IMG/VR virus record: IMGVR_UViG_3300022188_000577
Span: 1 to 11,416 of that record
Reading direction: 5' to 3' (one strand)
Length of the DNA: 11,416 bases
Shown here: one piece after another, positions 1 to 11,416 of the stretch
How positions within the stretch are numbered: position 1 is the stretch's first letter
How the letters are laid out: every line of letters starts with the position of its first letter
The notes under the pieces: generated by a model
The model's database searches: none
What the model was told of the DNA's origin: nothing
What the model saw: the letters and a program-made list of their open reading frames with translations, nothing else
Made by a program: the position numbers and the translations under genes

Positions 1-66
1 AGCTTGAAGGTTTAACCGTTATCTGAATGTATGTAGAATCCACATCCAAATCCGTTAGAATTCCTT
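1..66 (+). repeat. Terminal direct repeat, copy 1 (circular assembly overlap)
   Basis: agcttgaagg...ttagaattcctt is identical to 11351-11416. Confidence 0.98.
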
Positions 67-1132
67 TATACTCTAATTCCGAACCATACCAAACCTCAAT
101 TACAAATGGATTAAAGTATTCCCAATCGTCTTCATAGAACTTATGCCATGTCCCATCATCATACGGATTTGTGAGCTTTGCGTATAATATCTCGACTTCT
201 TCTGTTAGTCCGTTTTCATCCGTTTGGGCTTCTGCTATTAAGTTGTTGTTTCTATCATATACTTTAACAACTCTGCCATATAATGGATTACCGTTTATAT
301 CTGTAACCTTGAATACTACTGTATAAACTCTTTGGATTTCTCCGCTTATATCTCCTTCAGCCAAATACCACCCGATTTTCCAGTTATGCGGTTTACAGTT
401 TACATATTTAGCCACATTCGGAGAGCGCAACCTGTAAACATTCGCTAACCTATCTTTTGACGAACCTCTTAAATTTCTAAAAACTTGCCCAGCAGAGTTT
501 ACGACCCATGTCATTTGCGCAACAGTCGTCTTAATGTAAACATCCTGAACGTCGCAATTAACCACGTCTTCCATATAACCCCATTTGCCCGTTATTATGT
601 TCTTGTGAAACTCAGTATATCTTAAGTCTCTCACTACATTGTGGAATAAACAACCTTTAACTTCCTTTGCATATCCTCTAAAGTCAAATCTATGTGAATC
701 ATCTCTTAGTATAAAGCTACACGCATAAAACTTAACATCGCTATCTTTCTCAACATTGAAGTATGCGATATATGAGCTTTGATATAGCACAAATGTACAT
801 CCTTTTTGATAATTTTCTTCTCCATCTGTAATTACTTTCTCACCAAAAGTAGCGTTACAGTTTGCTTTAAAGTTTATAATGCGTTCACCATTATAGCTTG
901 CTTGAGTTTCAACTACTAAAACCGTTCCCTTCTCTTCGAATAGCGTTTCAGTGCTACCATCGCCGAATTGAAGCTTAGCAGTAGTTTTGTAAACACATTC
1001 GCTAAGTTTCGTGAATTTTCCCCATCCATTATTTACGTCGGCTTGATAAATATCCTCAAAAGTGTAAGGGCTTCCGTTTTTTGACCCTACTACTGTAATT
1101 GTATTGGTTGTAGAATCGTAAGTTATCGGCAT
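1..1132 (-). CDS. 400-aa putative adhesin/terminal fibre protein, N-terminal 377 codons; continues across the junction at 11350->11280
   Basis: Hand translation: ATG at 1132 (2 nt after the upstream stop), no stop down to base 1. Begins MPITYDSTTNTITVVGSKNGSPYTFEDIYQADVNNGWG. Beta-rich middle, then a prealbumin/carboxypeptidase-regulatory-like motif VFKVTDINGNPLYGRVVKVYDRNNNLIAEAQTDENG. Function is inferred. Confidence 0.88.
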   Translation of the reverse strand, partial: MPITYDSTTNTITVVGSKNGSPYTFEDIYQADVNNGWGKFTKLSECVYKTTAKLQFGDGSTETLFEEKGTVLVVETQASYNGERIINFKANCNATFGEKVITDGEENYQKGCTFVLYQSSYIAYFNVEKDSDVKFYACSFILRDDSHRFDFRGYAKEVKGCLFHNVVRDLRYTEFHKNIITGKWGYMEDVVNCDVQDVYIKTTVAQMTWVVNSAGQVFRNLRGSSKDRLANVYRLRSPNVAKYVNCKPHNWKIGWYLAEGDISGEIQRVYTVVFKVTDINGNPLYGRVVKVYDRNNNLIAEAQTDENGLTEEVEILYAKLTNPYDDGTWHKFYEDDWEYFNPFVIEVWYGSELEYKGILTDLDVDSTYIQITVKPSS

Positions 1133-1134
1133 AT

Positions 1135-1410
1135 TTACAATGGATATTCTTCTGGAATTTCTTCACATTGGCTTAGGTCTATCTCTACGTTAATGTCTGA
1201 AACGTCAATCGTATCTTTCTCGTATTCTTTTAGACGTTCAGGAATTTCTAATCCTTGTAGCTTTAACGTTGCTACGTATAGTATCTTAAACTTTTCTGGA
1301 ACTTTGTCCCAATCCATCCTATACCACTTGTCATTGCAAGGAAACACTATCTCTAAGTTTTCTCCGCTTTGGTTCACGTTTATCAAATTGAATGGTATTT
1401 TTACTATCAT
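1135..1410 (-). CDS. Hypothetical protein, 91 aa (fibre operon)
   Basis: ATG start, 1-2 nt gaps to both neighbours, typical composition. Confidence 0.8.
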   Translation of the reverse strand: MIVKIPFNLINVNQSGENLEIVFPCNDKWYRMDWDKVPEKFKILYVATLKLQGLEIPERLKEYEKDTIDVSDINVEIDLSQCEEIPEEYPL

Positions 1411-1411
1411 A

Positions 1412-1762
1412 TTACTTATAAAACTCTGATATCTTAATTAAATTGCCGTTTTCATCATATATCAAATCTCTCTTTAATTGAATAGTTTGATTAGCTTCTT
1501 CATCAAATACATAAAAAACGATTTGCTTTAAAGTAGAATCTTCATAAATAAACTCTACGTCTAATATTTTCACTATAACTTCTTTATATTCGTTTGTAGA
1601 AGTATCTTTATAATATATTACATTTCTATTCTTATATAATGTAAATATTGGGTCTCTTAATATCACTTCATGCTTGTCTACGTAAGCTACTAACTTATTC
1701 CAATCCTTCGCATATAATACCTCTCCCTCTCTTTTTCTTAACTCGTTGTATACCTCTCCCAT
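1412..1762 (-). CDS. Putative virion fibre/adaptor protein, 116 aa
   Basis: N-terminal GEVLYAKDWNKLV resembles the G-x-x-(I/L)-x-A-x-x-WN motif of viral fibre N-termini; C-terminal LIYDENGNL beta-hairpin. Function is inferred. Confidence 0.7.
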   Translation of the reverse strand: MGEVYNELRKREGEVLYAKDWNKLVAYVDKHEVILRDPIFTLYKNRNVIYYKDTSTNEYKEVIVKILDVEFIYEDSTLKQIVFYVFDEEANQTIQLKRDLIYDENGNLIKISEFYK

Positions 1763-1771
1763 TGTTATATA

Positions 1772-2425
1772 TTATATTATTATGATATAGTTATTATCTC
1801 CATACCAATCTATGATTACTTTTTTCGTCATTACGTAACTATTATAGGGTTTTTCAGAATATACGTCAACGATTACGTTTAATATTCTACATAATTCATC
1901 GTAAAACGTATTTTTTGTTATGTTATTATGTATTTCAATACATAAATTTGGCTTGTCTCTCTTTAAAACTTCGTATGCACCTAATAAAACGTTATACTCG
2001 TGTCCTTCCGTATCTATTTTAATAAAATCTACTTTTATGTTATTGAATAAGTTATCAATCGTTTCAGTCTCTACGTCGTAAGTATCTTTTGTTTTAACTT
2101 CTTTATGCTTGTCATCAACTATTGAAGAATGAACTAACGTCTCTTTATCGTAAAACCTCGTTTTTCCTTTTATACTTGATAAAGCTATGTTATAACAAAA
2201 GACTTTCTTATTTAACAATCCCAATTCTTCCATATTTTTAATTAAAATGTTGTATAACTTTTTGTTAGGTTCAAATGCATAAACTTTTTCTGAAATTTGT
2301 GATAAAAAATAAGACCATTGCCCATCTGATGCTCCAATGTCTATTGCCACATTATACTTCTTATCCTTGAAATATTCCTTTATTTTCTTTTCGTGGACAT
2401 TCCATTTAAGTATCTCAATCACCAT
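1772..2425 (-). CDS. FkbM-family SAM-dependent methyltransferase
   Basis: Motifs IDIGASDG, VYAFEPN, NIALS, TIDNL, FIKIDTEGHEYNVLLGA, IEIH. Confidence 0.93.
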   Translation of the reverse strand: MVIEILKWNVHEKKIKEYFKDKKYNVAIDIGASDGQWSYFLSQISEKVYAFEPNKKLYNILIKNMEELGLLNKKVFCYNIALSSIKGKTRFYDKETLVHSSIVDDKHKEVKTKDTYDVETETIDNLFNNIKVDFIKIDTEGHEYNVLLGAYEVLKRDKPNLCIEIHNNITKNTFYDELCRILNVIVDVYSEKPYNSYVMTKKVIIDWYGDNNYIIII

Positions 2426-3123
2426 TTTACCTTATCTAATATATCCTTTTCCGATAACTTTCCTTTAAACTCTATTAGTATAAAGTTATCATACTGTAAA
2501 CAATTATCAATTACTTCAATATATTCCGCATATACTTTTTTTAACATGTCTTTAAATGTTTCCTTTGTTAATTCATTATATGGAAAGTAATCAAATATCT
2601 TTCTAAAAAATACTGAAATCATAAAGGCATTAGTTATCTGCTTCCCCATTGCATACTTGTCAGTTTTATCCCACCAACCCATGTAAGAATTATATACTTC
2701 TTCAACAGGTCTTTTCAACGCTATAACTTTACAATGCTTAAATCTTTCACATATTTCCTTTAAATGTATCCATATGTAAACATCTTTTATTAACCAATTT
2801 CCATCCAATCTATCTATTTCTCTTAATATTCTTAGATAACTCCCTCCTACTTCAATATCTGGATACAAGTTCCAAACCCATTCGTGCATCCATGTTTTTG
2901 CATTTTCATAAATTCGTTCAAGTAATTCTTTTGGTAGCTTATAATAATCGTGGTTAATTTCACCTATTACGTCGTGAGTTAAGCAATTTCCTCTTAACGC
3001 AAACTCTGGATAATCTTTATTGAAAGGTTCATACAATCCATATAAGTTATAATGTTCTTTTAATACTTTATATGTGAATGCTGTTCCCGTTCTCGGAAAA
3101 GAAATTATCATGAACTTAATCAT
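2419..3123 (-). CDS. PAPS-dependent sulfotransferase
   Basis: N-terminal 5'-PSB loop ISFPRTGTAF, then YEPF, and 3'-PB-like motif VIALKRPVEEVYNSY. Overlaps the methyltransferase start by 7 nt. Confidence 0.85.
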   Translation of the reverse strand: MIKFMIISFPRTGTAFTYKVLKEHYNLYGLYEPFNKDYPEFALRGNCLTHDVIGEINHDYYKLPKELLERIYENAKTWMHEWVWNLYPDIEVGGSYLRILREIDRLDGNWLIKDVYIWIHLKEICERFKHCKVIALKRPVEEVYNSYMGWWDKTDKYAMGKQITNAFMISVFFRKIFDYFPYNELTKETFKDMLKKVYAEYIEVIDNCLQYDNFILIEFKGKLSEKDILDKVKW

Positions 3124-3144
3124 GTTAAAAAAATAATTACACTA

Positions 3145-3152
3145 TTTTTAAA
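3145..3152 (-). promoter_or_regulatory. Candidate archaeal TATA box for the sulfotransferase operon
   Basis: TTTAAAAA on the minus strand, 22-29 nt upstream of the ATG at 3123, preceded by purine-rich GGAGAA. Confidence 0.45.
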
Positions 3153-3238
3153 TTCTCCGTCTTTTTAATAATCTTCTTAATAAACTTTTCTTTTCATACA
3201 ATTTCATTATCACATATATTATAAAAAATAATATTAGG

Positions 3239-3532
3239 TTAGCAAGCAAATCTACTACGTTCATTTCTTTGTTCTTCTTCAACTTTTTCTATAAAACTCT
3301 TCACGACGTTCTGGTAAGTATCGAGTATCACTGTAATCGTGTTCAAAGTTGCAAACGCCGATGCATACAGTAATGTTATAGCGTCCATTTCTTGCCCTTT
3401 TTCCTTTAGCTTTTCATTATAAGCTTCTGCTATTTCTTCAAGTAAGCTTACATACTCATCTACTATCTTTTTTAATCTCTTTTTTGATATCTCCTCTGCT
3501 TCTTTGAACCTTCTGTACACTATCATCCTCAT
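3239..3532 (-). CDS. Hypothetical helical/coiled-coil protein, 97 aa
   Basis: ATGA overlap with the upstream gene; charged helical composition. Confidence 0.8.
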   Translation of the reverse strand: MRMIVYRRFKEAEEISKKRLKKIVDEYVSLLEEIAEAYNEKLKEKGQEMDAITLLYASAFATLNTITVILDTYQNVVKSFIEKVEEEQRNERSRFAC

Positions 3533-3801
3533 TTCAATATGAATTCAATTTCTATTCCATCCTTGAACTTAACCCAGATTGTATCGTTCTTTCTTACTTC
3601 ATATGATATACCATCATCCTTTGATTTTGCGTATAATTTGTTATTATGAACGAATAAATCATCTAATTCATCAAGGTTATACTGATCGTCTATCAAAGTT
3701 ATCGATTCTATGTCTTCTTTATTTTTCTTTATATACTCTATAAATTTCCTTATCTTTTCAACTTTTTTTCTATTGAAAAAGTTTGTTATCACGTTTCCCA
3801 T
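3529..3801 (-). CDS. Hypothetical protein, 90 aa
   Basis: ATG preceded by an SD-like GTGA; overlaps both neighbours. Confidence 0.8.
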   Translation of the reverse strand: MGNVITNFFNRKKVEKIRKFIEYIKKNKEDIESITLIDDQYNLDELDDLFVHNNKLYAKSKDDGISYEVRKNDTIWVKFKDGIEIEFILK

Positions 3802-4004
3802 ATTATCACTACAGTTCTATTTCCTTTTTTCTTCGTTTTTATTTCTTCTTTTATTTCTAATTCTTTTACTGCTGAATATACAGCTCCTATCGTTGAATTC
3901 GCTTCTTTCACTATTTCCTTTACCAACTCTGATAATTCTATTTCCTTTATTCCTTTTGCTTTTAACTCATTTATTTTTTTCAAGATGTGTTCTTTCAATG
4001 TCAC
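3789..4004 (-). CDS. Winged helix-turn-helix DNA-binding protein 1 (71 aa from a GTG start)
   Basis: Aligns without gaps to 8883..9089 if it starts at GTG 4004. A TATA/BRE sits 27-34 nt upstream of that GTG, so the track start at 4052 is probably too long. Confidence 0.72.
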   Translation of the reverse strand: MTLKEHILKKINELKAKGIKEIELSELVKEIVKEANSTIGAVYSAVKELEIKEEIKTKKKGNRTVVIIWET

Positions 4005-4030
4005 GTTAATGTTATTTATTATCATCATCA

Positions 4031-4044
4031 TATTTAAATTTTTC
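4031..4044 (-). promoter_or_regulatory. BRE + TATA box for the wHTH1 operon
   Basis: Minus strand reads GAAAAA-TTTAAATA. Confidence 0.6.
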
Positions 4045-4066
4045 TTCATCAACTCGAAAATTAAAC

Positions 4067-4114
4067 AAATTGTTAAACGAATTTTTTGATAAATTGTTTG
4101 ATAAATTATTGAAT
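4067..4114. repeat. Four imperfect tandem 12-bp repeats
   Basis: aaattgttaaac / gaattttttgat / aaattgtttgat / aaattattgaat. Confidence 0.6.
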
Positions 4115-4175
4115 AAATGGTCCATTAGAGTATTTACTTTACAAAAATACTATATTTTATTTAACGACAATTACT

Positions 4176-4183
4176 TTTAATAA
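4176..4183 (+). promoter_or_regulatory. Candidate TATA box for 4209..4421
   Basis: TTTAATAA 26-33 nt upstream of the ATG. Confidence 0.45.
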
Positions 4184-4208
4184 GTTACTTGATACGTTAC
4201 TTATTAAA

Positions 4209-4421
4209 ATGTCTTACAACAAAGTTTCAAAGCTTTTTAAAAGCGTTTCGTGTTTGTTTAAACTGATTGAACTTTTTGAGAGAATTGATAATTTCCAAAA
4301 GGATCTAATTATTATAAAAGAGAGGATTAAATACATTAACGACGAAGTTACAGAAATTAAAAAAGACGTTAAAGAGTTAAGAAAGTTTATTTTCGAAATC
4401 TTAATTAAAAACAAGAAGTAA
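4209..4421 (+). CDS. Small coiled-coil protein, 70 aa
   Basis: Heptad pattern RIDNFQKDLIIIKERIKYINDEVTEIKKDVKELRKFI; upstream TATA box. Confidence 0.7.
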   Translation: MSYNKVSKLFKSVSCLFKLIELFERIDNFQKDLIIIKERIKYINDEVTEIKKDVKELRKFIFEILIKNKK

Positions 4422-4425
4422 TCCA

Positions 4426-4593
4426 TTATTTTATTATCTTAACGATTCTTTCAAACGTTGGTTTGTTCTTTAACATTACTCTAAAGACTTTATTACAATA
4501 AGGACATCTTTTCGTCCAATTGTATTTGTTATTCGATTTTGGTTGATATTTCATTGTTTTATTACAATGTGGGCATTGAACTATTAATATCAT
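4426..4593 (-). CDS. C4 zinc-ribbon protein, 55 aa (absent from the ORF track)
   Basis: Hand translation MILIVQCPHCNKTMKYQPKSNNKYNWTKRCPYCNKVFRVMLKNKPTFERIVKIIK*, with two CPxC motifs. Starts 9 nt after the upstream stop. Confidence 0.85.
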   Translation of the reverse strand: MILIVQCPHCNKTMKYQPKSNNKYNWTKRCPYCNKVFRVMLKNKPTFERIVKIIK

Positions 4594-4602
4594 ATTAACG
4601 AT

Positions 4603-5043
4603 TTATAATAAATAATATTTATTAAGTTGCGACGTTCCTAAGACGAAAGCTTTCTTAAATTCATAAGGTCTTTCATACCTATTGTATATTATTATCTTAT
4701 CTATTTCGTTTAAAATATCAGGGTTTAAGTTATACTTTGAAAACTCTTGCTTGATAATTGATACGTATCTTTCCCTATCAACTTTCCATTTATACTTTAA
4801 TTGCGTTTTGAATAGTTTTTGAGCGTATAACAAGTAAGTTTGTAATTCTATTGGTGTTAAGTTATACTTTTGTAAAACTCTTTTAACAGTTTGTAATATC
4901 CTTTGTTCAAACAAAAAATTAACTGTCCAGTTGTTTTTATATTTCTCAAAGTCTATTTTATCAATCGTGTAATTGTTAACGTAATTGTTAGTTCCTTCAA
5001 TGTCCCAGTTGCACTTTACTTTATAAAATTGCATTTTACTCAT
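4603..5043 (-). CDS. SIRV2-type capsid-fold paralog (putative minor structural protein), 146 aa
   Basis: VKRVLQKYNLTPIELQTYLLYAQKL...FSKYNLNPDILNEI matches the MCP C-terminal bundle (VGAILDSHGVPPNQRPFYINVAREV...WISRGLDPAIIDEI) and is clearly paralogous to 10878..11273. Confidence 0.78.
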   Translation of the reverse strand: MSKMQFYKVKCNWDIEGTNNYVNNYTIDKIDFEKYKNNWTVNFLFEQRILQTVKRVLQKYNLTPIELQTYLLYAQKLFKTQLKYKWKVDRERYVSIIKQEFSKYNLNPDILNEIDKIIIYNRYERPYEFKKAFVLGTSQLNKYYLL

Positions 5044-5057
5044 TGTTTAATTATGTT

Positions 5058-5146
5058 ACCCTTGATTTATAAACATTGAACCCTATGTGACCACTTGCCC
5101 TGTAATCCGACATGACCCTTGACTTAAATACTTTGAACCCTGCGTG
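5058..5146. repeat. Two 32-bp direct repeats, 57-bp period (5058-5089 and 5115-5146)
   Basis: acccttgatttataaacattgaaccctatgtg vs acccttgacttaaatactttgaaccctgcgtg, 26/32 identical. Confidence 0.85.
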
Positions 5147-5534
5147 TTACACTTACTTTATTCATAATCATTATTATCTTTAACTTCTTCGCCATCTCGA
5201 ATAGGTCTTTATACTTATTGACGTCTATATCGTGTTTTTTAATGAAATCAAGTATGTTTTGATAAATTAACTCAAAAGTTTTGTTTGTAAACTTTCTATG
5301 CTTGTAAACTATTTTTTTACAAAACGAAAACGTTAGCATTGCGTCCCACGACGTCCATTCACACCTTTCTATCTTTCTATTTGCATAATCTATAAAGTGT
5401 TTTTCAACTTCTAACTGATAAGCTAATTCATAATATACTTTATCATATGTTAACTCCTTTACTTTTGAAAATATGAGTTCCTGTTGTTGCTTGTTAAACT
5501 TGTTATAAGCTCTTTTTAAAGAATATTTAAGCAT
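5124..5534 (-). CDS. Divergent capsid-fold paralog, 136 aa (possibly 160 aa via a +1 shift, ending at 5051)
   Basis: TAATG coupling to the upstream gene. FSFCKKIVYKHRKFTNKTF...IKKHDID resembles MCP INVAREVYRLSRKFAGQTL...ISRGLD. Confidence 0.65.
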   Translation of the reverse strand: MLKYSLKRAYNKFNKQQQELIFSKVKELTYDKVYYELAYQLEVEKHFIDYANRKIERCEWTSWDAMLTFSFCKKIVYKHRKFTNKTFELIYQNILDFIKKHDIDVNKYKDLFEMAKKLKIIMIMNKVSVTRRVQSI

Positions 5535-6415
5535 TAAAAACCTCTACTTTGTCTATATTCTCTTAATACATCAAATTGAGTCGAATATGTAACTATTACA
5601 TGTTTTGCTATATCCTTATACCTTCTAACAAAATAATCTAATATCCTAAACAATTTCATTTTAACCCTATTTAAATAGTATCTTTTTCTTTCGTTTATTC
5701 TTTGCATTTTTCTTGTTAAATACTTTCTCATCCAATCTTCATAATTATCAACATACCTTTTTCTATACTCCAAGTATCTAACTTTATATCTCAATTTATA
5801 ATATGCTCTGTATACTTTGTTTTCCTTTGCTTTGTTAACTAAATCATTTAATGTGCTTATCAACTCAGAAGCTTTTGTTTTGTCATGTTCTTTATTAATT
5901 AATTTTTCATAATATTCAAGAGTATCCTCATATGCGTCTATTATTTTTAAATGTATATCATATGTTTTGTGTTGTTTTAACATATTCTTAAACGACTCAA
6001 CATCGTTTTTATAGTCATTTATTATCGATTCAATTTCGTTTAAAACCTCTTTTGCTTTATCATAATTTTTTGATTTAATTAAGTTTTTAACAAGCTCAAA
6101 CTTATTTCTTATTAAGTAATTTCTATCTCTTAATCTTCTTTCAACTGAATCAAGATCAACACCTCTTGCTTTTTGATACATATGTATGTAGAAAGGTAAA
6201 TTATCTATACAAAACCATACAGCCATTACAATTATTGAAATTAGTGCTGGGTTTATATCTATTCTATTTTCATCAATTATATATTGAAAATCTTTGTATC
6301 TTGATTTTAATCTGCTTAAAATTTCGTCATATTTTCTTATTATCTTATATCTTATTGAATCATATTTTCCTAAATAATACATTAATCTCTGTTCTGCTTC
6401 TTTTCCGGATATCAT
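5534..6415 (-). CDS. Basic alpha-helical protein, 293 aa, probably structural or DNA-binding
   Basis: Long ORF directly downstream of the MCP; rich in K/R/Y; helical. N-terminus (RLMYYLGKYD) weakly recalls the MCP N-terminal arm. Confidence 0.75.
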   Translation of the reverse strand: MISGKEAEQRLMYYLGKYDSIRYKIIRKYDEILSRLKSRYKDFQYIIDENRIDINPALISIIVMAVWFCIDNLPFYIHMYQKARGVDLDSVERRLRDRNYLIRNKFELVKNLIKSKNYDKAKEVLNEIESIINDYKNDVESFKNMLKQHKTYDIHLKIIDAYEDTLEYYEKLINKEHDKTKASELISTLNDLVNKAKENKVYRAYYKLRYKVRYLEYRKRYVDNYEDWMRKYLTRKMQRINERKRYYLNRVKMKLFRILDYFVRRYKDIAKHVIVTYSTQFDVLREYRQSRGF

Positions 6416-6421
6416 TATAAT

Positions 6422-6431
6422 AAAAAATAAA
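6422..6431 (-). terminator. Candidate archaeal oligo(T) terminator after the MCP gene
   Basis: TTTATTTTTT 15 nt after the stop; the same motif follows 8883..9089. Confidence 0.4.
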
Positions 6432-6446
6432 GTTAGTTAGATGCTA

Positions 6447-6809
6447 TTAATAGACGCAAGTTATTCCAAATAACGCCAAAATCTCGTCAATTATGGCTGG
6501 GTCTAAACCTCTTGAAATCCACTTGCTTCTTACTATGCAAGCCTCGTTAGTTAACGTTTGCCCTGCAAATTTCCTTGATAACCTGTAAACTTCTCTTGCA
6601 ACATTGATATAGAAAGGTCTTTGGTTTGGAGGAACTCCGTGCGAGTCTAAAATAGCACCTACTTGAGTTTCTATTGTTGCTAAGTTGCTAAATTGTGTAT
6701 CAACTTGCTCTACCATTATATCCTTTAACGCTGTAAATCTACTTTGAATTACTGTTGGGTCGACTTTTGCTTCATACTTTTTCTTCCTATATACGTCAGA
6801 CCTTACCAT
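6447..6809 (-). CDS. Major capsid protein, SIRV2/AFV1-type (Adnaviria helical MCP), 120 aa
   Basis: Basic N-terminal arm RSDVYRKKKYEAKVDPTV, then V-x-A-I-L-x-x-x-G-V...R-x-x-Y and a terminal GLDPAIIDEI. As I recall it, this parallels the rudivirus coat pattern (RYAKWQAKF...NPTV...VSAVLTQYGI...NRAIY...NPQVLDAV). Has its own strong TATA box and a downstream T-tract. Confidence 0.85.
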   Translation of the reverse strand: MVRSDVYRKKKYEAKVDPTVIQSRFTALKDIMVEQVDTQFSNLATIETQVGAILDSHGVPPNQRPFYINVAREVYRLSRKFAGQTLTNEACIVRSKWISRGLDPAIIDEILALFGITCVY

Positions 6810-6835
6810 CTCAATATATAATGTATTTTTACTAC

Positions 6836-6850
6836 TATATAAAGTTTATC
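6836..6850 (-). promoter_or_regulatory. BRE + TATA box of the MCP promoter
   Basis: Minus strand GATAAAC-TTTATATA; TATA is 27-34 nt upstream of ATG 6809. Confidence 0.7.
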
Positions 6851-6890
6851 TTGTTGTTTCACTTTTGAGTTATCAAGAACCCATTGTGTT

Positions 6891-6903
6891 CAAAATTTAT
6901 AAA
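6891..6903 (+). promoter_or_regulatory. BRE + TATA box of the divergent zinc-finger operon
   Basis: CAAAA-TTTATAAA; TATA is 23-30 nt upstream of ATG 6926. Confidence 0.65.
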
Positions 6904-6925
6904 TGAAAGGTCATGTTGGTATATT

Positions 6926-7084
6926 ATGTCAAAGGTAACCTTGTGTCCCAGATGTAATAATAATATGAAGAGTATTTATATTAAGAGAGGAGGAAAGTAC
7001 GTTATCATAGGAAAAATTTGTTTAAATTGCAAGTTATACTTCTTTTATGATATTGATACCAAAGGAAAACGTGATAAGACTTGA
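6926..7084 (+). CDS. C4 zinc-ribbon protein, 52 aa
   Basis: MSKVTLCPRC...ICLNC. ATG 6926 fits the TATA spacing; the track start at 6884 lies upstream of the promoter. Confidence 0.78.
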   Translation: MSKVTLCPRCNNNMKSIYIKRGGKYVIIGKICLNCKLYFFYDIDTKGKRDKT

Positions 7085-7412
7085 GGAAAACAAGTGTATT
7101 AGAAAGTTAGAGGACTTGTTAGACGCTGAAATAAAGACTTTAGAAAAGTTCATTAACAAAGCTTCTGAAGTTAAAAGAAGATTGTATAAGTTAGATTTAG
7201 ACGAAGACGTTAAAAAAAATGTGTTATCTGCTTACGATGAGATAGTAAGTAAGTATGTTTACGAGAATGTAATTAAAAACATCGTTTATTACACTTTATT
7301 AATATGTTACGCCAAAGTTCTAAAAGAAAAACGAAAGTTATTTTGTTATGAGGATTCAAAAGGTGCAATATACGTTCATTACCTCCCTCACATAAAAGAG
7401 TTGCAAAAATAA
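7047..7412 (+). CDS. Hypothetical helical protein, 121 aa
   Basis: ATG start, overlaps the zinc-finger gene, typical composition. Confidence 0.78.
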   Translation: MILIPKENVIRLEENKCIRKLEDLLDAEIKTLEKFINKASEVKRRLYKLDLDEDVKKNVLSAYDEIVSKYVYENVIKNIVYYTLLICYAKVLKEKRKLFCYEDSKGAIYVHYLPHIKELQK

Positions 7413-7435
7413 ACTATTCCTATCATTGTTAAGAT

Positions 7436-8596
7436 TTAAGTAGATAAATGTAACAAGAATTTTGGATAATTGTTTTCCGCGAGAAACTTATCGTAATACT
7501 TTTTAGTTGCTTTTCTCTTTTTTTCTGTTAAATCTTGATTCTTATAAGCTTTTAACATAGTTTTTGCTAATTCAGAAGCTTCGTATTCGTAGTATTCGCA
7601 CATAAATCCATGTTCGTTTGGTTTTTGTATTATCGATTCATAATCAAAGAAATACGCAACGTCTTCTCTTATTAACTCTTTAAACAATTGATGTTTAACG
7701 CATATTACACAGTTATTAAAATATAAAGATTCTGCAATTGGCATGCAAAAACCTTCTGACTTTGAAGAAACAACATAAACTTTACTTACATTGTATAAAC
7801 TCAATATTTCCTTATAGGATAAGCTTCCTCCTAAATCAAGTTGTATTATCCTTTTCTTTTCTATTAACTTTTTTATGAATTTGTGTTGCTTTAAGTTGTA
7901 ATCTGTTATTAAAACGTGCACGGTATCTTCTATCTTGTTTTTTAAACAATGTTTATAAAACATAGTTAAAGCTTTTACGTATTTATCCCATCCTTTTCTT
8001 GTATTTTTGTTTGCATTTGTCATATAAACGAACTTATCAGTTAAATCAACGTTATAGTTTTCTTTAAAGAATTCATACGCCCAATCTTTTAGTTTTTTGG
8101 CATCATTTATATAACTTTTTGGTATGGAGTGATAAATTACGTCTGTTATTTTTACGTCGTGTTTTCTTATTATGTTGTAAGTGTAATAAGAATTTGCTAT
8201 TATTTTAGCATACTTTGAAATATTTTGTAGATTTAACTTCAAAAGTAAGTTTTTGTATAAAGTGTCTCCTTCGACTGTGTAATATATGATATTTCTTTTT
8301 TTAGTTGACATTGAAATAACGTGAGTTAAGTTCGAAACGTAAAAAGAACCAAGAGGAACTATGAATATTCTTTTATCAAATAGTTGCATCTTTCTTATAA
8401 AGTTAGAAGATAAAGAATTTTCAAATATGTCAATGTATGCGTGAATTTGATTTTGTTTTAATATCTCAGAAATCGTTTCTGCTACGTTTTTAAAAGATAT
8501 AGCGTCTACGTAAAAAATAGCAACCGTTGACGATTTCAAATCGTCCAAATAATCTGATATCGATTGTGAAAGAGTGGTGTCGTCTCGCCACTTCAT
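7436..8596 (-). CDS. GT-B fold glycosyltransferase, family GT4
   Basis: IANSYYT, VIYHSI, RKGWD and the signature VVSSKSEGFCMPIAES (E-x7-E). GT4 enzymes are common in rudiviruses and lipothrixviruses. Confidence 0.92.
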   Translation of the reverse strand: MKWRDDTTLSQSISDYLDDLKSSTVAIFYVDAISFKNVAETISEILKQNQIHAYIDIFENSLSSNFIRKMQLFDKRIFIVPLGSFYVSNLTHVISMSTKKRNIIYYTVEGDTLYKNLLLKLNLQNISKYAKIIANSYYTYNIIRKHDVKITDVIYHSIPKSYINDAKKLKDWAYEFFKENYNVDLTDKFVYMTNANKNTRKGWDKYVKALTMFYKHCLKNKIEDTVHVLITDYNLKQHKFIKKLIEKKRIIQLDLGGSLSYKEILSLYNVSKVYVVSSKSEGFCMPIAESLYFNNCVICVKHQLFKELIREDVAYFFDYESIIQKPNEHGFMCEYYEYEASELAKTMLKAYKNQDLTEKKRKATKKYYDKFLAENNYPKFLLHLST

Positions 8597-8604
8597 TTTT
8601 CATC

Positions 8605-8640
8605 AAACTTTTAAAAAAATTATCGAACAAATTTTTCAAT
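8605..8640. repeat. Three imperfect tandem 12-bp repeats resembling 4067-4114
   Basis: aaacttttaaaa / aaattatcgaac / aaatttttcaat. Confidence 0.45.
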
Positions 8641-8657
8641 CTTTTTTAATCATCTAA

Positions 8658-8806
8658 CAGTTGTGATTTTATTATTAGTTTTATTATACAATACTTCAGG
8701 ATATATATTAGCAAAAAATCAATAGTATTGTATTATAGTAGTAATAATTAATTAAAGTAATTATCAAATAGTTAATTAATTAAATTAAAAAATAAAATCA
8801 CTACTG
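8658..8806. repeat. Nested inverted repeats in the longest intergenic region (candidate origin)
   Basis: Outer pair 8658-8673/8791-8806 (15/16). Inner pairs 8682-8695/8724-8737 (13/14) and 8745-8755/8772-8782 (11/11). Confidence 0.75.
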
Positions 8807-8843
8807 AGTTAAAAAAAATCTGTCGATTTTCGGATAACACACC

Positions 8844-8858
8844 GCAAAGGTTTAATAT
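8844..8858 (+). promoter_or_regulatory. BRE + TATA box for the wHTH2 operon
   Basis: GCAAAGG-TTTAATAT; TATA is 25-32 nt upstream of ATG 8883. Confidence 0.7.
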
Positions 8859-8882
8859 GCTAAAGCTAATAATAAAATAACC

Positions 8883-9089
8883 ATGAACGTGAAGCAACTT
8901 GTATTACTACTGCTACAAGATTATAAGGACATGGGGGTTACCAAAATAGAGGAAAGGGTATTGGTAGAGGAAGTTATAAAGAGAACAGGATGTCACAGGC
9001 AGACTGTGTATAACGTAATACATTGGTTAAAAGTTAGAGGTGTAATAAGGGTTGAAGGCTCGGGTAGGAACAAGTTTATCTTACTTTAA
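8883..9089 (+). CDS. Winged helix-turn-helix DNA-binding protein 2, 68 aa
   Basis: LVEEVIKRTGCHRQTVYNVIHWLKVRGVIRVEG is a typical HTH recognition helix followed by L-x-x-x-G-x-I and a wing. Confidence 0.85.
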   Translation: MNVKQLVLLLLQDYKDMGVTKIEERVLVEEVIKRTGCHRQTVYNVIHWLKVRGVIRVEGSGRNKFILL

Positions 9090-9100
9090 TTTATTTTTTT
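9090..9100 (+). terminator. Candidate oligo(T) terminator after wHTH2
   Basis: TTTATTTTTTT immediately after the stop. Confidence 0.35.
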
Positions 9101-9110
9101 AAAATCGTAT

Positions 9111-9863
9111 ATGAAGTATCGTTATAGGGATATAACATATAGACTTAAAAGGTACAAACTGTACTGGAAACAAAGACTTTATTATATTTTAGTTGATTTG
9201 ATAAAAGAACGCGCGTCTGAAAGGTTATTAGATGAATTAACTAAGCAAATGTTTTTTGAGTGGATTGTTATTCCTAAACTAAAATCTTTAGGATTTACAG
9301 ACGAAGAGTTAAGGAGAATGTTTCCTTCATATCTCGGATATGCAAAGAAGTTGTGGAACAAAAAATACAAGTATGTTTTTTCTTCTTTAGACGTTGAACA
9401 CGATAACGTTTATTACGAAATGATTCAAAGAGGATTCGATAAAGAAAAGAGTAAAACAGCGTTAAATATTGGTAGAAAACATCCTGTCGTTGCAAAAGCT
9501 TATATTAAAGTTTCGTCAACTCCTTTAATTTATCCACCCCTTCTAAAAGCACTTCCCGTTTCTACTAAATTTAGTTACGAAATAGTTCCACCAATATTAG
9601 TATCAAAAGAGTTAAAAACTAAATTTAGTTACAAATTAACTCCACCTTTAACTGTTGAAAAAGAAATTAACGTATCTTTTAATTACTCTCTAGTCCCACC
9701 TTTGGAAGTTGAAAAAGAAATTAACGTGTCTTTTAACTATTCGCTTGTTCCACCAATCAAAATATCGAAAGAAGTTAACGTATCTTTTAATTACGAACTA
9801 GTTCCACCCTTAAAAGTTATAAAAGAAATTGAAATTATATTTAACTATGAAATTACAAGCTAA
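9111..9863 (+). CDS. Capsid-fold N-terminal domain fused to six 18-aa repeats (putative terminal/fibre anchor), 250 aa
   Basis: VIPKLKSLGF...PSYLGYAKKLWNKKYKY...MIQRGFD matches the paralog pattern; C-terminal repeats of the type VPPLEVEKEINVSFNYSL. Confidence 0.78.
   Translation: MKYRYRDITYRLKRYKLYWKQRLYYILVDLIKERASERLLDELTKQMFFEWIVIPKLKSLGFTDEELRRMFPSYLGYAKKLWNKKYKYVFSSLDVEHDNVYYEMIQRGFDKEKSKTALNIGRKHPVVAKAYIKVSSTPLIYPPLLKALPVSTKFSYEIVPPILVSKELKTKFSYKLTPPLTVEKEINVSFNYSLVPPLEVEKEINVSFNYSLVPPIKISKEVNVSFNYELVPPLKVIKEIEIIFNYEITS
9531..9854 (+). repeat. Six tandem 54-bp coding repeats
   Basis: YPPLLKALPVSTKFSYEI / VPPILVSKELKTKFSYKL / TPPLTVEKEINVSFNYSL / VPPLEVEKEINVSFNYSL / VPPIKISKEVNVSFNYEL / VPPLKVIKEIEIIFNYEI. 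Confidence 0.95.
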
Positions 9864-10866
9864 GGTAATACTGAAAATAATAAAAAAAGACGGTAGGGAA
9901 GTAGTTATCGAAAAAGAGTGCAATAGTTTTCACGAAAACTTTTTCAGAATGTTAAAGTCTGTGTATACGAATGACTTAGTTATAACGAATAGGGATGGTT
10001 CAACAACAACTTTAAATCACTTCGAAAAAGTAAGCATTATAAACACAGACGGAACGAAATACACGAAATGGAGGATTGCAATAGGACAAGGAATTTCAGA
10101 TAACGATTTAACGACAATTATCGACGAAAAAGACGCTACAGTTGAATTAGACGAAGCTAACAGAGTTGCAACTGATTACGCAAAGTTTGGTCCTTACTCA
10201 GAATCAAAAACGATTGACGCCGTAGCACTTTATGTAAAAACTAACTTTAGTTCTGGTGCGGGAAAGTTTGCTTGGTCTTTTAACGCACCTTTGCTTTTGG
10301 AAAATGTCGGGACAACGACGATAGAGGCTGGAGACGTTTTAGTAGTTGGAATACAAACTAAGTTAGTCGCAGGGACAAACGTAACGATTCACGATTCTTT
10401 TGTCTATGTTTCTTTATCGTTTTTAGCGTATTACATGATTGAATACGAATATTCACCTGTGGGCGATGACCAACTTCAAATAGCTTCAAAATATAAAGAT
10501 TTAGCTTTGAGTGGTAACGCAGACTACTGGGCTTATTACGATAGTTATTACGACGAAAAACTCGATTTCTTGAATCATTCAGCAGAAATGAAAATTTATC
10601 ATTCTGATGGGACTTCTGTAACTGAATCTGCAACTGCAACGATTGATTTAACTAATAGAAAAGTTATAATCTACGCTTCTCACTTTTATTCAGAATCAAA
10701 GACAGTGACGAAAGTAGAACTTTACATTCGTTTAAAAGGATGGTATTATAGCGATGGATGGGTGCAAGGCGCGTTGTATCACAAACTTTTAACTGCAGAT
10801 AACTTGAACGTAACAGTGGACGTTAACTACACGTTTAAACCAAAGTTTGAAATATCTATACCTTAA
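9847..10866 (+). CDS. Beta-rich putative virion terminal-structure protein with an internal duplication, 339 aa
   Basis: Likely start is ATG 9847. Two related halves, each containing NR...YA...YSESKT(I/V)..V.LY. IAIGQG recalls tail-fibre/baseplate N-terminal domains. Confidence 0.75.
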   Translation: MKLQAKVILKIIKKDGREVVIEKECNSFHENFFRMLKSVYTNDLVITNRDGSTTTLNHFEKVSIINTDGTKYTKWRIAIGQGISDNDLTTIIDEKDATVELDEANRVATDYAKFGPYSESKTIDAVALYVKTNFSSGAGKFAWSFNAPLLLENVGTTTIEAGDVLVVGIQTKLVAGTNVTIHDSFVYVSLSFLAYYMIEYEYSPVGDDQLQIASKYKDLALSGNADYWAYYDSYYDEKLDFLNHSAEMKIYHSDGTSVTESATATIDLTNRKVIIYASHFYSESKTVTKVELYIRLKGWYYSDGWVQGALYHKLLTADNLNVTVDVNYTFKPKFEISIP

Positions 10867-10877
10867 CGAAAATATTT

Positions 10878-11273
10878 ATGACGTGTAAACATTGGAACTT
10901 TCAAGGATACTTTAAGTATAAGCAAAGTTGGACTGACGAAAGGTTAAAAGAGAAAATTGAACCAATTGTAGATAGAATTATAAATAAGTGGAAATCTTGG
11001 CAAATAAGGTTGGACTTTTGCTTAAACAACGTTAAAAGAGTTTTAGATAGATTTGACATAACATCCGTTCAAAGAAAATATTATTTACTTTATGCTATTT
11101 TATTATGGTCTGTAATGTTTTTGTATGAATGGTTGGTCGATAGGAAAAGAGAACATTCTATTTTGAGATATAAGTTCGAAAGTTACGGCTTAGATCCGAA
11201 CATTCTAAACGAAATAGATAGAGTTGTTATATGGAACAAAGTTATTCAGCCTGTTAACAGGTTTTGGGAATAA
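10878..11273 (+). CDS. SIRV2-type capsid-fold paralog (putative minor structural protein), 131 aa
   Basis: VKRVLDRFDITSVQRKYYLLYA...KFESYGLDPNILNEID matches both the MCP and 4603..5043. Confidence 0.8.
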   Translation: MTCKHWNFQGYFKYKQSWTDERLKEKIEPIVDRIINKWKSWQIRLDFCLNNVKRVLDRFDITSVQRKYYLLYAILLWSVMFLYEWLVDRKREHSILRYKFESYGLDPNILNEIDRVVIWNKVIQPVNRFWE

Positions 11274-11279
11274 TTATCC

Positions 11280-11350
11280 TTATATAAACTTAAATGCCGT
11301 CATCTTTGCGTCGTGTTTCTTAATCTCGTTGTATATATCGCTTAAAGTAA
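11280..11350 (-). CDS. C-terminal end of the 400-aa junction-spanning protein
   Basis: In frame with 1..1132: ...VKPSS|FTLSDIYNEIKKHDAKMTAFKFI*. TAA at 11280-11282 is 6 nt from the convergent stop at 11273. Confidence 0.85.
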
Positions 11351-11416
11351 AGCTTGAAGGTTTAACCGTTATCTGAATGTATGTAGAATCCACATCCAAA
11401 TCCGTTAGAATTCCTT
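11351..11416 (+). repeat. Terminal direct repeat, copy 2 (circular assembly overlap)
   Basis: Identical to 1-66. Confidence 0.98.

What the first reader, a model, noticed from the sequence alone, without database searches (positions are those of the whole stretch)
9111..9863. Capsid-fold domain fused to six PP-punctuated 18-aa beta repeats
Seen: six 54-bp units, each x-P-P followed by an alternating hydrophobic strand ending F-(S/N)-Y-x-(L/I). Units 3 and 4 are nearly identical, suggesting recent expansion. The gene overlaps the next one. Inference: the capsid domain anchors in the helix, while the repeats form a beta-fibre stalk or a ruler/scaffold donating one strand to each copy of a partner such as the 339-aa protein. 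Repeat number would then set appendage length or stoichiometry. The NVS sequons in units 3-5 could be glycosylated.
Basis: partly seen in the sequence, partly recalled or inferred. Interest (0 to 1): 0.65.

Follow-up and report, generated by a model that had tools for sequence, protein, structure and literature searches.

The report
Capsid-derived protein with beta-repeat tail
A small filamentous archaeal virus from deep-sea vents encodes a protein whose front half is a diverged copy of its own DNA-wrapping coat protein and whose back half is six 18-residue beta-strand repeats; it is most likely a coat-anchored stalk or adaptor for attachment proteins, but its fold and partners are unproven.

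Summary
ORF 9111-9863 (+) encodes 250 aa. Residues 141-248 are six exact 18-aa units (54 nt): x-P-P, a short strand, K-E, then an alternating strand ending F-[SN]-Y-x-[LI]. Periodicity is far beyond chance (54 lag-18 identities; maximum 24 in 20,000 shuffles). The gene overlaps the next one by 17 nt.

The capsid inference is supported. A profile of the N-domain from four relatives aligns end to end with the virus's own SIRV2-type major capsid protein (hhalign score 35.5-37.8; shuffled null 11.2 +/- 2.3).

The 'recent expansion' inference is not supported. Units 3 and 4 share 16/18 residues but only 42/54 bases (dN 0.12, dS about 1.2).

Only four distinct relatives exist (plus near-identical cluster variants), all from vent metagenomes. 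Every array-bearing one is followed by a homologue of the 339-aa gene. Arrays differ among relatives: 6 x 18 aa, or 9-10 F-x-Y units at mostly 20-aa spacing, with one clean 20-aa indel.

The array fold is unresolved: AF2 twice, ESMFold, Pfam and PDB gave nothing. It fits the triple beta-spiral consensus loosely and resembles 18-aa arrays in phage tail proteins.

Best reading: a capsid-derived minor structural adaptor or stalk. This is a new variant of a known kind.

The parts
9111..9863 (+). Whole gene, 250 aa (P0001): capsid-like N-domain, linker, six 18-aa repeats
   Evidence: four distinct family members in vent metagenomes; nt-identical copy in an independent contig, L011
9111..9500 (+). 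N-terminal domain (aa 1-130), a diverged SIRV2-type capsid-protein paralogue; aa 1-35 are strongly basic (net +8)
   Evidence: hhalign of profile A2 against MCP profile A4: 106 columns, probability 79-85%, score 35.5-37.8, against a column-shuffled null of 11.2 +/- 2.3 with maximum 20.1. The MCP is the top hit among all 20 window ORFs. Charge.
9501..9530 (+). Linker (aa 131-140); it follows the family-invariant R122, H124 and P125
9531..9854 (+). Six tandem 54-nt / 18-aa units (aa 141-248); unit 1 is degenerate and units 3-5 carry NVS
9847..10866 (+). Downstream 339-aa gene overlapping by 17 nt; conserved neighbour of every array-bearing family member; variable between strains
10878..11273 (+). 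131-aa capsid-protein-like paralogue, last gene of the same-strand cluster
8883..9089 (+). 68-aa winged-helix protein, first gene of the same-strand cluster
6447..6809 (-). Bona fide major capsid protein, 120 aa, used as the reference for the N-domain
   Evidence: Pfam PF12193 and PF25647 above cut-off; PDB 6d5f, 6wq0 and 3j9x
4603..5043 (-). 146-aa capsid-protein-like paralogue
1..1132 (-). Main part of a 400-aa beta-rich protein that continues across the record ends (11280-11350). In relatives its homologue sits next to family members.
11280..11350 (-). C-terminal end of the same 400-aa protein, across the circular junction

Best explanation
P0001 is a minor structural protein derived from the capsid protein of a small filamentous, Adnaviria-like archaeal virus from hydrothermal vents. 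Shown: aa 1-~120 are a diverged paralogue of the virus's own DNA-wrapping SIRV2-fold major capsid protein and keep a strongly basic N-terminal helix. Also shown: aa 141-248 are six 18-aa beta-type repeats kept by purifying selection, and the length and type of this array vary among relatives. Inferred: the N-domain co-assembles with the capsid protein into the nucleoprotein helix, at low copy or at an end. The repeat array then projects outward as an extended beta stalk of tunable length. It serves as an adaptor for the co-transcribed, strain-variable 339-aa protein, and perhaps for the 400-aa beta-rich protein, in host attachment. The most likely array fold is an oligomeric fibre-shaft type, triple-beta-spiral-like, that does not fold as a monomer.
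For: N-domain:
- Profile-profile match to the MCP covers nearly the whole MCP (MCP 6-111 of 120; P0001 9-118). Score is 35.5-37.8 against a shuffled null of 11.2 +/- 2.3 with maximum 20.1.
- The MCP is the best of all 20 ORFs in the window.
- The MCP itself hits the solved SFV1, SSRV1-type and SIRV2 coat proteins.
- AF2 predicts an all-helical 1-106, at low confidence. Net charge of aa 1-35 is +8.

Array:
- The period is exact and the strand is amphipathic. Units 3/4 give dN/dS of about 0.1.
- All array-bearing members share the F-x-Y core and end right after it.
- There is a clean 20-aa one-unit indel between P0016 and P0002.
- The unit fits the beta-spiral consensus positions c, e, g, j, k and m given in PMC3150272.
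- The 18-aa array of a phage protein carrying a fibre-tail adaptor domain (P0012) matches better than 300 of 300 within-unit permutations.

Context:
- A 339-aa homologue follows every array-bearing member. Start and stop overlap by 17 nt in the window and in L005, and lie 2 nt apart in L002, L006, L007 and L009.
- The short paralogue P0020 directly precedes the 440-aa homologue of the 400-aa protein.
- ICTV states that the terminal structures of adnavirions are built of genus-specific minor proteins (PMC12282232).
Against: There is no usable 3D model of either domain (pLDDT 36.7 and 27.8). The N-domain matches no Pfam capsid model directly and no PDB coat protein directly. Known beta-spiral fibres carry a C-terminal head that registers the trimer (my own knowledge), whereas P0001 stops right after the last unit. 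Capsid proteins of this fold act as dimers (PMC12282232), so a trimeric shaft would need a symmetry mismatch. No virion, expression or interaction data exist, and no RNA runs hold the sequence. The match to the beta-spiral consensus is loose and needs a 3-residue insertion.
Confidence: 0.45

Rival explanations
1. The array is a monomeric beta-solenoid (cross-beta, one 18-aa coil per unit, about 3 nm long). It decorates the virion surface along its whole length, with P0001 acting as an alternative capsomer subunit rather than a terminal adaptor.
For: Invariant F14/Y16, N15 and K8/E9 columns would form the ladders typical of solenoids. An 18-residue coil length is known from beta-rolls and left-handed beta-helices (my own knowledge). 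The genome holds several capsid paralogues that could form mixed capsomers.
Against: Three predictors that often recognise regular solenoids gave no confident model. The array has no capping elements. The 120-aa and 128/131-aa pair already looks like the usual heterodimer.
Confidence: 0.2
2. One reading: each 18-aa unit donates one strand to one copy of the 339-aa protein, so that unit number sets the stoichiometry of an appendage.
For: Adjacency of the two genes is conserved in all array-bearing genomes seen, with overlapping or abutting stop and start. Arrays and the 339-aa family both diverge between lineages.
Against: There is no direct evidence. Unit number differs by one between close relatives whose 364-370-aa partners are alike. 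Adjacency alone is weak evidence.
Confidence: 0.1
3. P0001 is not in the virion. It is a capsid-derived DNA-binding or assembly factor, such as a scaffold, a genome-end binder or a regulator, and its repeats mediate self-association in the cell.
For: The N-terminus is basic. The gene lies directly after a winged-helix regulator gene. No structural evidence places it in virions.
Against: It sits in a cluster with capsid paralogues and large beta-rich proteins in three genome types. The match to the capsid protein spans the whole domain, not only the DNA-binding helix.
Confidence: 0.12

Closest known systems
SIRV2-type major capsid proteins of Adnaviria (Pfam PF12193, PF25647, PF21660; PDB 3j9x, 6d5f, 6wq0)
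   Same: The N-domain aligns over about 106 positions with the virus's own member of this family. It has a basic N-terminal helix and a helical prediction.
   Different: It is too diverged to hit the Pfam or PDB sequences directly. It also carries a 120-aa C-terminal extension, which I do not know from any described MCP of this fold (my knowledge; the ICTV profile describes only one or two plain MCPs).
Paralogous MCP pairs of lipothrixviruses, ungulaviruses and tristromaviruses (heterodimeric capsomers)
   Same: Capsid gene duplication and divergence within one genome (PMC12282232). Here the copies are 120, 131 and 146 aa plus this N-domain.
   Different: This genome has four MCP-like genes rather than two, and one of them is fused to a repeat array.
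Triple beta-spiral fibre shafts (adenovirus fibre, reovirus sigma1)
   Same: A repeat with alternating hydrophobic residues, a P/G turn and a short second strand. Consensus positions c, e, g, j, k and m (PMC3150272) are all matched in 5 of 6 unit junctions, read directly from the sequence.
   Different: The period is 18 aa, not 15. There is no sequence match to Pfam or PDB fibres, no C-terminal head, and trimerisation was not tested.
Orsay virus CP-delta (capsid protein covalently fused to a fibre)
   Same: Same architecture: a capsid domain followed by a repeat-built beta fibre in one polypeptide, incorporated at low copy (PMC7565637).
   Different: Orsay is an RNA virus with an icosahedral capsid, a pentameric beta-bracelet and 8-aa motifs. 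The resemblance is analogy only.
18-aa arrays in tailed-phage proteins P0011 (Ig domains like solved phage tail proteins) and P0012 (gp77 fibre-tail adaptor domain)
   Same: Same 18-aa period, and a shared order of a P or G turn, K-[QE]-[IV], and F three to four residues on. The match beats all 300 within-unit permutations.
   Different: No shared flanking domains. No structure is known for these arrays either. Convergence cannot be excluded.

Membership tests
SIRV2-type major capsid protein superfamily | Direct match to a family model above the curated cut-off | tested here: not met
   No Pfam capsid family for P0001, P0002, P0003, P0016 or P0020, even at E<=10. The profile A2 finds no coat protein in the PDB.
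SIRV2-type major capsid protein superfamily | Profile-profile similarity over the whole domain to a bona fide member | tested here: met
   A2 against A4: 106 columns, probability 79-85%, score about 10 sd above the column-shuffled null. Best of 20 ORFs in the window. A4 is itself anchored to 6d5f, 6wq0 and 3j9x.
SIRV2-type major capsid protein superfamily | All-alpha fold: long N-terminal helix plus helical bundle | tested here: inconclusive
   The AF2 model has helices at 2-33, 37-43, 46-59, 64-87 and 98-106, but mean pLDDT is 36.7, so no fold search was justified.
SIRV2-type major capsid protein superfamily | Basic N-terminal arm able to contact DNA | tested here: met
   Net charge is +8 in aa 1-35, against +4 in aa 1-30 of the MCP. 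This is a sequence proxy only.
SIRV2-type major capsid protein superfamily | Forms dimeric capsomers that wrap A-form DNA in virions | not testable with these tools
   Needs virions or reconstitution.
Triple beta-spiral fibre shaft | Repeat with hydrophobic c, e, g, k, m and P/G at j (PMC3150272) | tested here: met
   F14=c, Y16=e, L18=g, P3=j, L4=k, V6=m at five unit junctions, with 3 extra residues before c. The pattern is loose, so this is a lead only.
Triple beta-spiral fibre shaft | Sequence relation to known shafts | tested here: not met
   No PDB or Pfam hit for the protein, the array or a two-unit profile at E<=10.
Triple beta-spiral fibre shaft | C-terminal head or registration domain | tested here: not met
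   The protein ends two residues after the last unit. Relatives also end at F-x-Y-T-T.
Triple beta-spiral fibre shaft | Homotrimer | not tested
Beta-solenoid repeats | One coil per unit, with stacked ladders and a confident solenoid model | tested here: inconclusive
   The invariant columns are compatible. The ESMFold and AF2 models are of low confidence.

The most novel reading that the evidence does not exclude
A family of capsid-derived adaptors. Copies of the helical capsid protein have been turned into sockets that plug into the nucleoprotein helix and carry length-tunable beta-repeat shafts, each paired with its own attachment protein: P0001 with the 339-aa protein, and the short paralogue with the 400/440-aa protein. 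This would be the first fibre covalently fused to a helical archaeal capsid protein, and a new 18-20-aa fibre repeat shared in form with tailed phages.
Probability: 0.25. Interest if true: 0.75.

Novelty: new variant of a known kind. Interest (0 to 1): 0.55.

Why it matters
How filamentous archaeal viruses build their ends and attach to hosts is poorly known. The terminal proteins are genus-specific and mostly unrelated to one another. A capsid paralogue fused to a repeat shaft would show a simple route from coat protein to attachment apparatus, and a way to tune reach by adding or dropping units. The repeat is also an uncharacterised beta-repeat class with look-alikes in phage tail proteins. 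The host virus is itself unusual. Its genome is 11.35 kb, apparently circular or circularly permuted, with 29% G+C and four capsid-like genes. It occurs in vent samples from at least eight separate sample and study codes.

Tried and rejected
Structure and complex prediction:
- Pair prediction of the 339-aa protein with residues 131-250 gave no verdict (ipSAE 0.01 and 0.06). It is evidence neither for nor against binding.
- AF2 of the full protein with a 4-row alignment gave pLDDT 36.7. AF2 of the 20-aa-type array of P0016 gave pLDDT 27.8. Both were unusable, so no fold search was run.
- The ESM Atlas model has pLDDT 0.46. Its structural neighbours are meaningless and its feature hits are unnamed phage clusters.

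Searches that found nothing useful:
- Pfam and PHROGs gave nothing for P0001.
- PDB searches by sequence or profile gave nothing for the protein, the array, P0012's array or the 339-aa family.
- The phage collection gave no hit by DNA or protein.
- IMG/VR pattern scans with P0001, A2 and A4 found no relatives.
- An 18-column HMM of the unit was too short to discriminate.

Ideas rejected:
- The 176-aa member is not an array-less orthologue whose genome also lacks the 339-aa gene. L009 carries both the short and the long paralogue.
- Membership of the candidate 'Samediviridae' or of Ahmunviridae is rejected. Samediviruses are linear, 12-22 kb, 34-55% G+C, with PCNA, an MCM-like protein and PriS; the ahmunvirus genomes described are linear and about 19.6-23.3 kb. 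None of these genes is recognisable here.
- Most large-protein hits of the big search are unrelated repeats matched through periodicity and composition.

Full report
**The observation**

The ORF at 9111-9863 (+) encodes 250 aa. PP dipeptides lie at residues 142, 160, 178, 196, 214 and 232, exactly 18 apart. This defines six 54-nt units starting at 9531, 9585, 9639, 9693, 9747 and 9801.

The unit reads x-P-P-[LI]-x-[VI]-x-K-E-[ILV]-x-[VTI]-x-F-[SN]-Y-x-[LI]. P2, P3, F14 and Y16 are invariant. Unit 1 is the most degenerate.

Tandem Repeats Finder reports the 54-nt period for the best 3.5 copies, and the repeat finder shows the same spacing from 9570. Within aa 141-248, 54 of 90 positions are identical at lag 18. 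The maximum over all lags in 20,000 shuffles was 24.

The 339-aa gene starts at ATG 9847. This start agrees with the N-termini of its homologues and gives a 17-nt overlap. NVS sequons occur in units 3-5, and NYS sequons also in units 3-4.

**'Recent expansion' is not supported**

Units 3 and 4 share 16 of 18 residues but only 42 of 54 bases. Six of the 16 conserved codons differ synonymously. NG86 gives dN 0.117 and dS 1.21, a ratio of about 0.1 (only 18 codons, so this is rough). The protein-level likeness is therefore maintained by selection, not by youth.

Some exchange between units does occur in the population. In a variant strain (L008) the last unit has seven base changes clustered within 12 nt. 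They turn it into the consensus I-N-V-S-F-N form, as expected from conversion by another unit.

**The genome**

The window is a whole virus record with an exact 66-nt direct terminal repeat. An independent 11,830-nt contig from another sample (L011) equals window 3424-11416 followed by 1-3903, with a single copy of the 66 nt. The genome is therefore a circular or circularly permuted molecule of 11,350 bp.

G+C is about 29%. The sequence occurs in hydrothermal-vent metagenomes under at least eight separate sample and study codes.

ORF 6447-6809 (-) is a bona fide SIRV2-type major capsid protein. It matches Pfam PF12193 and PF25647 above their cut-offs. Its profile hits the solved coat proteins 6d5f, 6wq0 and 3j9x. 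Two further paralogues of 146 and 131 aa are 35% identical to each other and match the capsid profile (probability 89%).

The genome also encodes a GT1 glycosyltransferase, a sulfotransferase-like protein and an FkbM methyltransferase. No replication gene is recognisable.

Classified Adnaviria have linear genomes of 17.6-41.5 kb with inverted terminal repeats and one or two capsid proteins (PMC12282232). The vent filamentous viruses described so far are linear and larger; the candidate 'Samediviridae' also encode PCNA, an MCM-like protein and PriS (PMC12934983 and its supplement). This virus fits none of them.

**The N-terminal domain**

P0001 itself matches no Pfam, PHROG or PDB entry. Pairwise BLASTP against the capsid protein gives only a weak hit, but at the homologous position.

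The exhaustive search of 1.8 billion representatives found two true relatives, P0002 (358 aa) and P0003 (176 aa). A profile word search added P0016 (378 aa). The four share about 40% identity over residues 1-130.

The profile of these N-domains aligns with the capsid-protein profile over 106 columns: P0001 9-118 against 6-111 of 120. Probability is 79-85% and the score 35.5-37.8. The reversed capsid profile scores 16.0, and 150 column-shuffled versions score 11.2 +/- 2.3 with a maximum of 20.1. Against all 20 ORFs of the window, the capsid protein is the top hit (31.5) and the 146-aa paralogue is second (20.1). Everything else scores 16.6 or less.

Residues 1-35 carry a net charge of +8. AF2 predicts helices throughout 2-106, at low confidence. 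I conclude, at about 0.8, that the N-domain is a diverged capsid-protein paralogue. The fold itself is not shown.

**The family and its context**

- In L005, L006 and L007 the order is MCP(120), paralogue(128), a 67-aa gene on the opposite strand, P0016, then a 364-370-aa homologue of the 339-aa protein at 30% identity.
- In L009 the order is the same up to the 67-aa gene. There follow the short member P0020 (176 aa), a 440-aa homologue of the window's 400-aa protein, a P0002-type long member, and a 366-aa homologue.
- So every array-bearing member is followed by a 339-aa homologue, and the short paralogue precedes the other large beta-rich protein. Stop and start overlap by 17 nt in the window and L005, and lie 2 nt apart in L002, L006, L007 and L009.
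- The short form is a paralogue, not an orthologue that lost its array.

**Array variation**

All long members share the core [IV]-x-F-x-Y-x-L and end directly after an F-x-Y strand. The period and the turn differ. P0001 has six units of 18 aa with PP. P0002 has nine and P0016 ten F-x-Y units, the last five or six intervals at 20 aa, with Gly in the turn. P0016 and P0002 differ by exactly one 20-aa unit.

Within the window's own strain group, contigs from three runs and L011 span the array without indels, and the gene in L011 is identical at the base level. A cluster variant differs at two residues, both in the N-domain.

One low-depth contig in run X4 departs inside unit 3. It carries 35 other bases that stay in frame and, by my hand translation, give a 22-aa unit of the unit-2 type. 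The contig then ends. This hints at a different array in that strain and is unresolved.

**Fold of the array**

The fold is not resolved. The ESM Atlas model, AF2 on the whole protein and AF2 on the longer P0016 array are all of low confidence. A two-unit profile finds nothing in the PDB, and Pfam finds nothing at E<=10. Two leads remain.

1. The unit fits the published triple beta-spiral consensus, which has hydrophobic c, e, g, k and m and P/G at j (PMC3150272). Here F14, Y16, L18, P3, L4 and V6 fill those positions, with three extra residues lengthening the first strand. The pattern is loose. P0001 also lacks the C-terminal head of known fibres.
2. The big search found 18-aa arrays in two tailed-phage proteins. 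P0012 ends in a gp77 fibre-tail adaptor domain. P0011 starts with Ig domains like those of solved phage tail proteins. P0012's array scores 50.4 bits against P0001's array, compared with 4.0 +/- 6.2 (maximum 44.4) for 300 within-unit permutations that keep period and composition. The order of residues in the unit is therefore shared, by descent or by convergence.

Other large hits of that search are unrelated repeats.

**Mechanism**

I commit to a capsid-derived minor structural protein. The N-domain enters the nucleoprotein helix beside the capsid proteins. The array projects outward as an extended, probably oligomeric, beta stalk whose length is set by unit number. It links the capsid to the co-transcribed 339-aa protein, which is the most variable part of the region between strains.

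Shown: the homology of the N-domain, the repeat anatomy, selection on the units, variation among relatives, and synteny. Inferred: virion location, oligomeric state and partner. The Orsay virus CP-delta fusion is a precedent for a capsid protein covalently carrying a fibre (PMC7565637).

**Glycosylation**

The five sequons all lie in units 3-5 and recur in the L008 variant's last unit. They are not conserved in P0002 or P0016. The virus has its own glycan-modifying genes, but no tool here can test modification.

**Limits**

The homotrimer was therefore not tested.
- No RNA data exist for this virus.
- No host could be assigned.

Noticed in passing
window 1-66 and 11351-11416; L011: The 66-nt direct terminal repeat is an assembly overlap. 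An independent 11,830-nt contig runs across the junction with one copy of it, so the genome is an 11,350-bp circle or a circularly permuted molecule. Classified Adnaviria are linear, 17.6-41.5 kb, with inverted terminal repeats (PMC12282232).
   Followed up: partly
window 6447-6809 (-), 4603-5043 (-), 10878-11273 (+), 9111-9500 (+): There are four capsid-protein-like genes in an 11-kb genome. Known adnavirians have one or two.
   Followed up: partly
window 9847-10866 (+), especially 10033-10179: The 339-aa gene is the strain-variable hotspot of the region. Dense substitutions occur in runs X3 and X4 and in L011, and an 81%-identical variant exists (P0018). In L011 the P0001 gene has no change at all.
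   Followed up: partly
window 7436-8596 (-), 2419-3123 (-), 1772-2425 (-): A glycan-modification set: GT1 glycosyltransferase, a sulfotransferase-like protein and an FkbM methyltransferase. Relatives also carry a nucleotidyltransferase-cupin (mannose-1-P type) gene.
   Followed up: no
L009 2348-2686 (+): A related virus contig carries a gene with a precomputed Pfam Cas_csx3 hit, a possible virus-borne ring nuclease acting against type III CRISPR signalling.
   Followed up: no
window 8597-8882: An AT-rich gap between divergent gene clusters holds a 24-nt tandem repeat (8743-8795) and several inverted repeats (I7, I9, I12). It is a candidate promoter or origin region.
   Followed up: no
L008 1-105 versus window 9759-9863: In a variant strain, the last repeat unit differs by seven bases clustered within 12 nt. 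The changes restore the consensus I-N-V-S-F-N, which looks like gene conversion between units.
   Followed up: partly
run X4 contig at window 9648: A low-depth contig leaves the reference inside unit 3 with 35 in-frame bases, which by hand translation give a 22-aa unit of the unit-2 type. X4 has no depth over 9688-9835. This may be a different array in that strain.
   Followed up: partly
window 3710-4009 (+): A 99-aa, very hydrophobic ORF lies antisense to two minus-strand genes. It is probably a by-product of strand composition rather than a gene.
   Followed up: no
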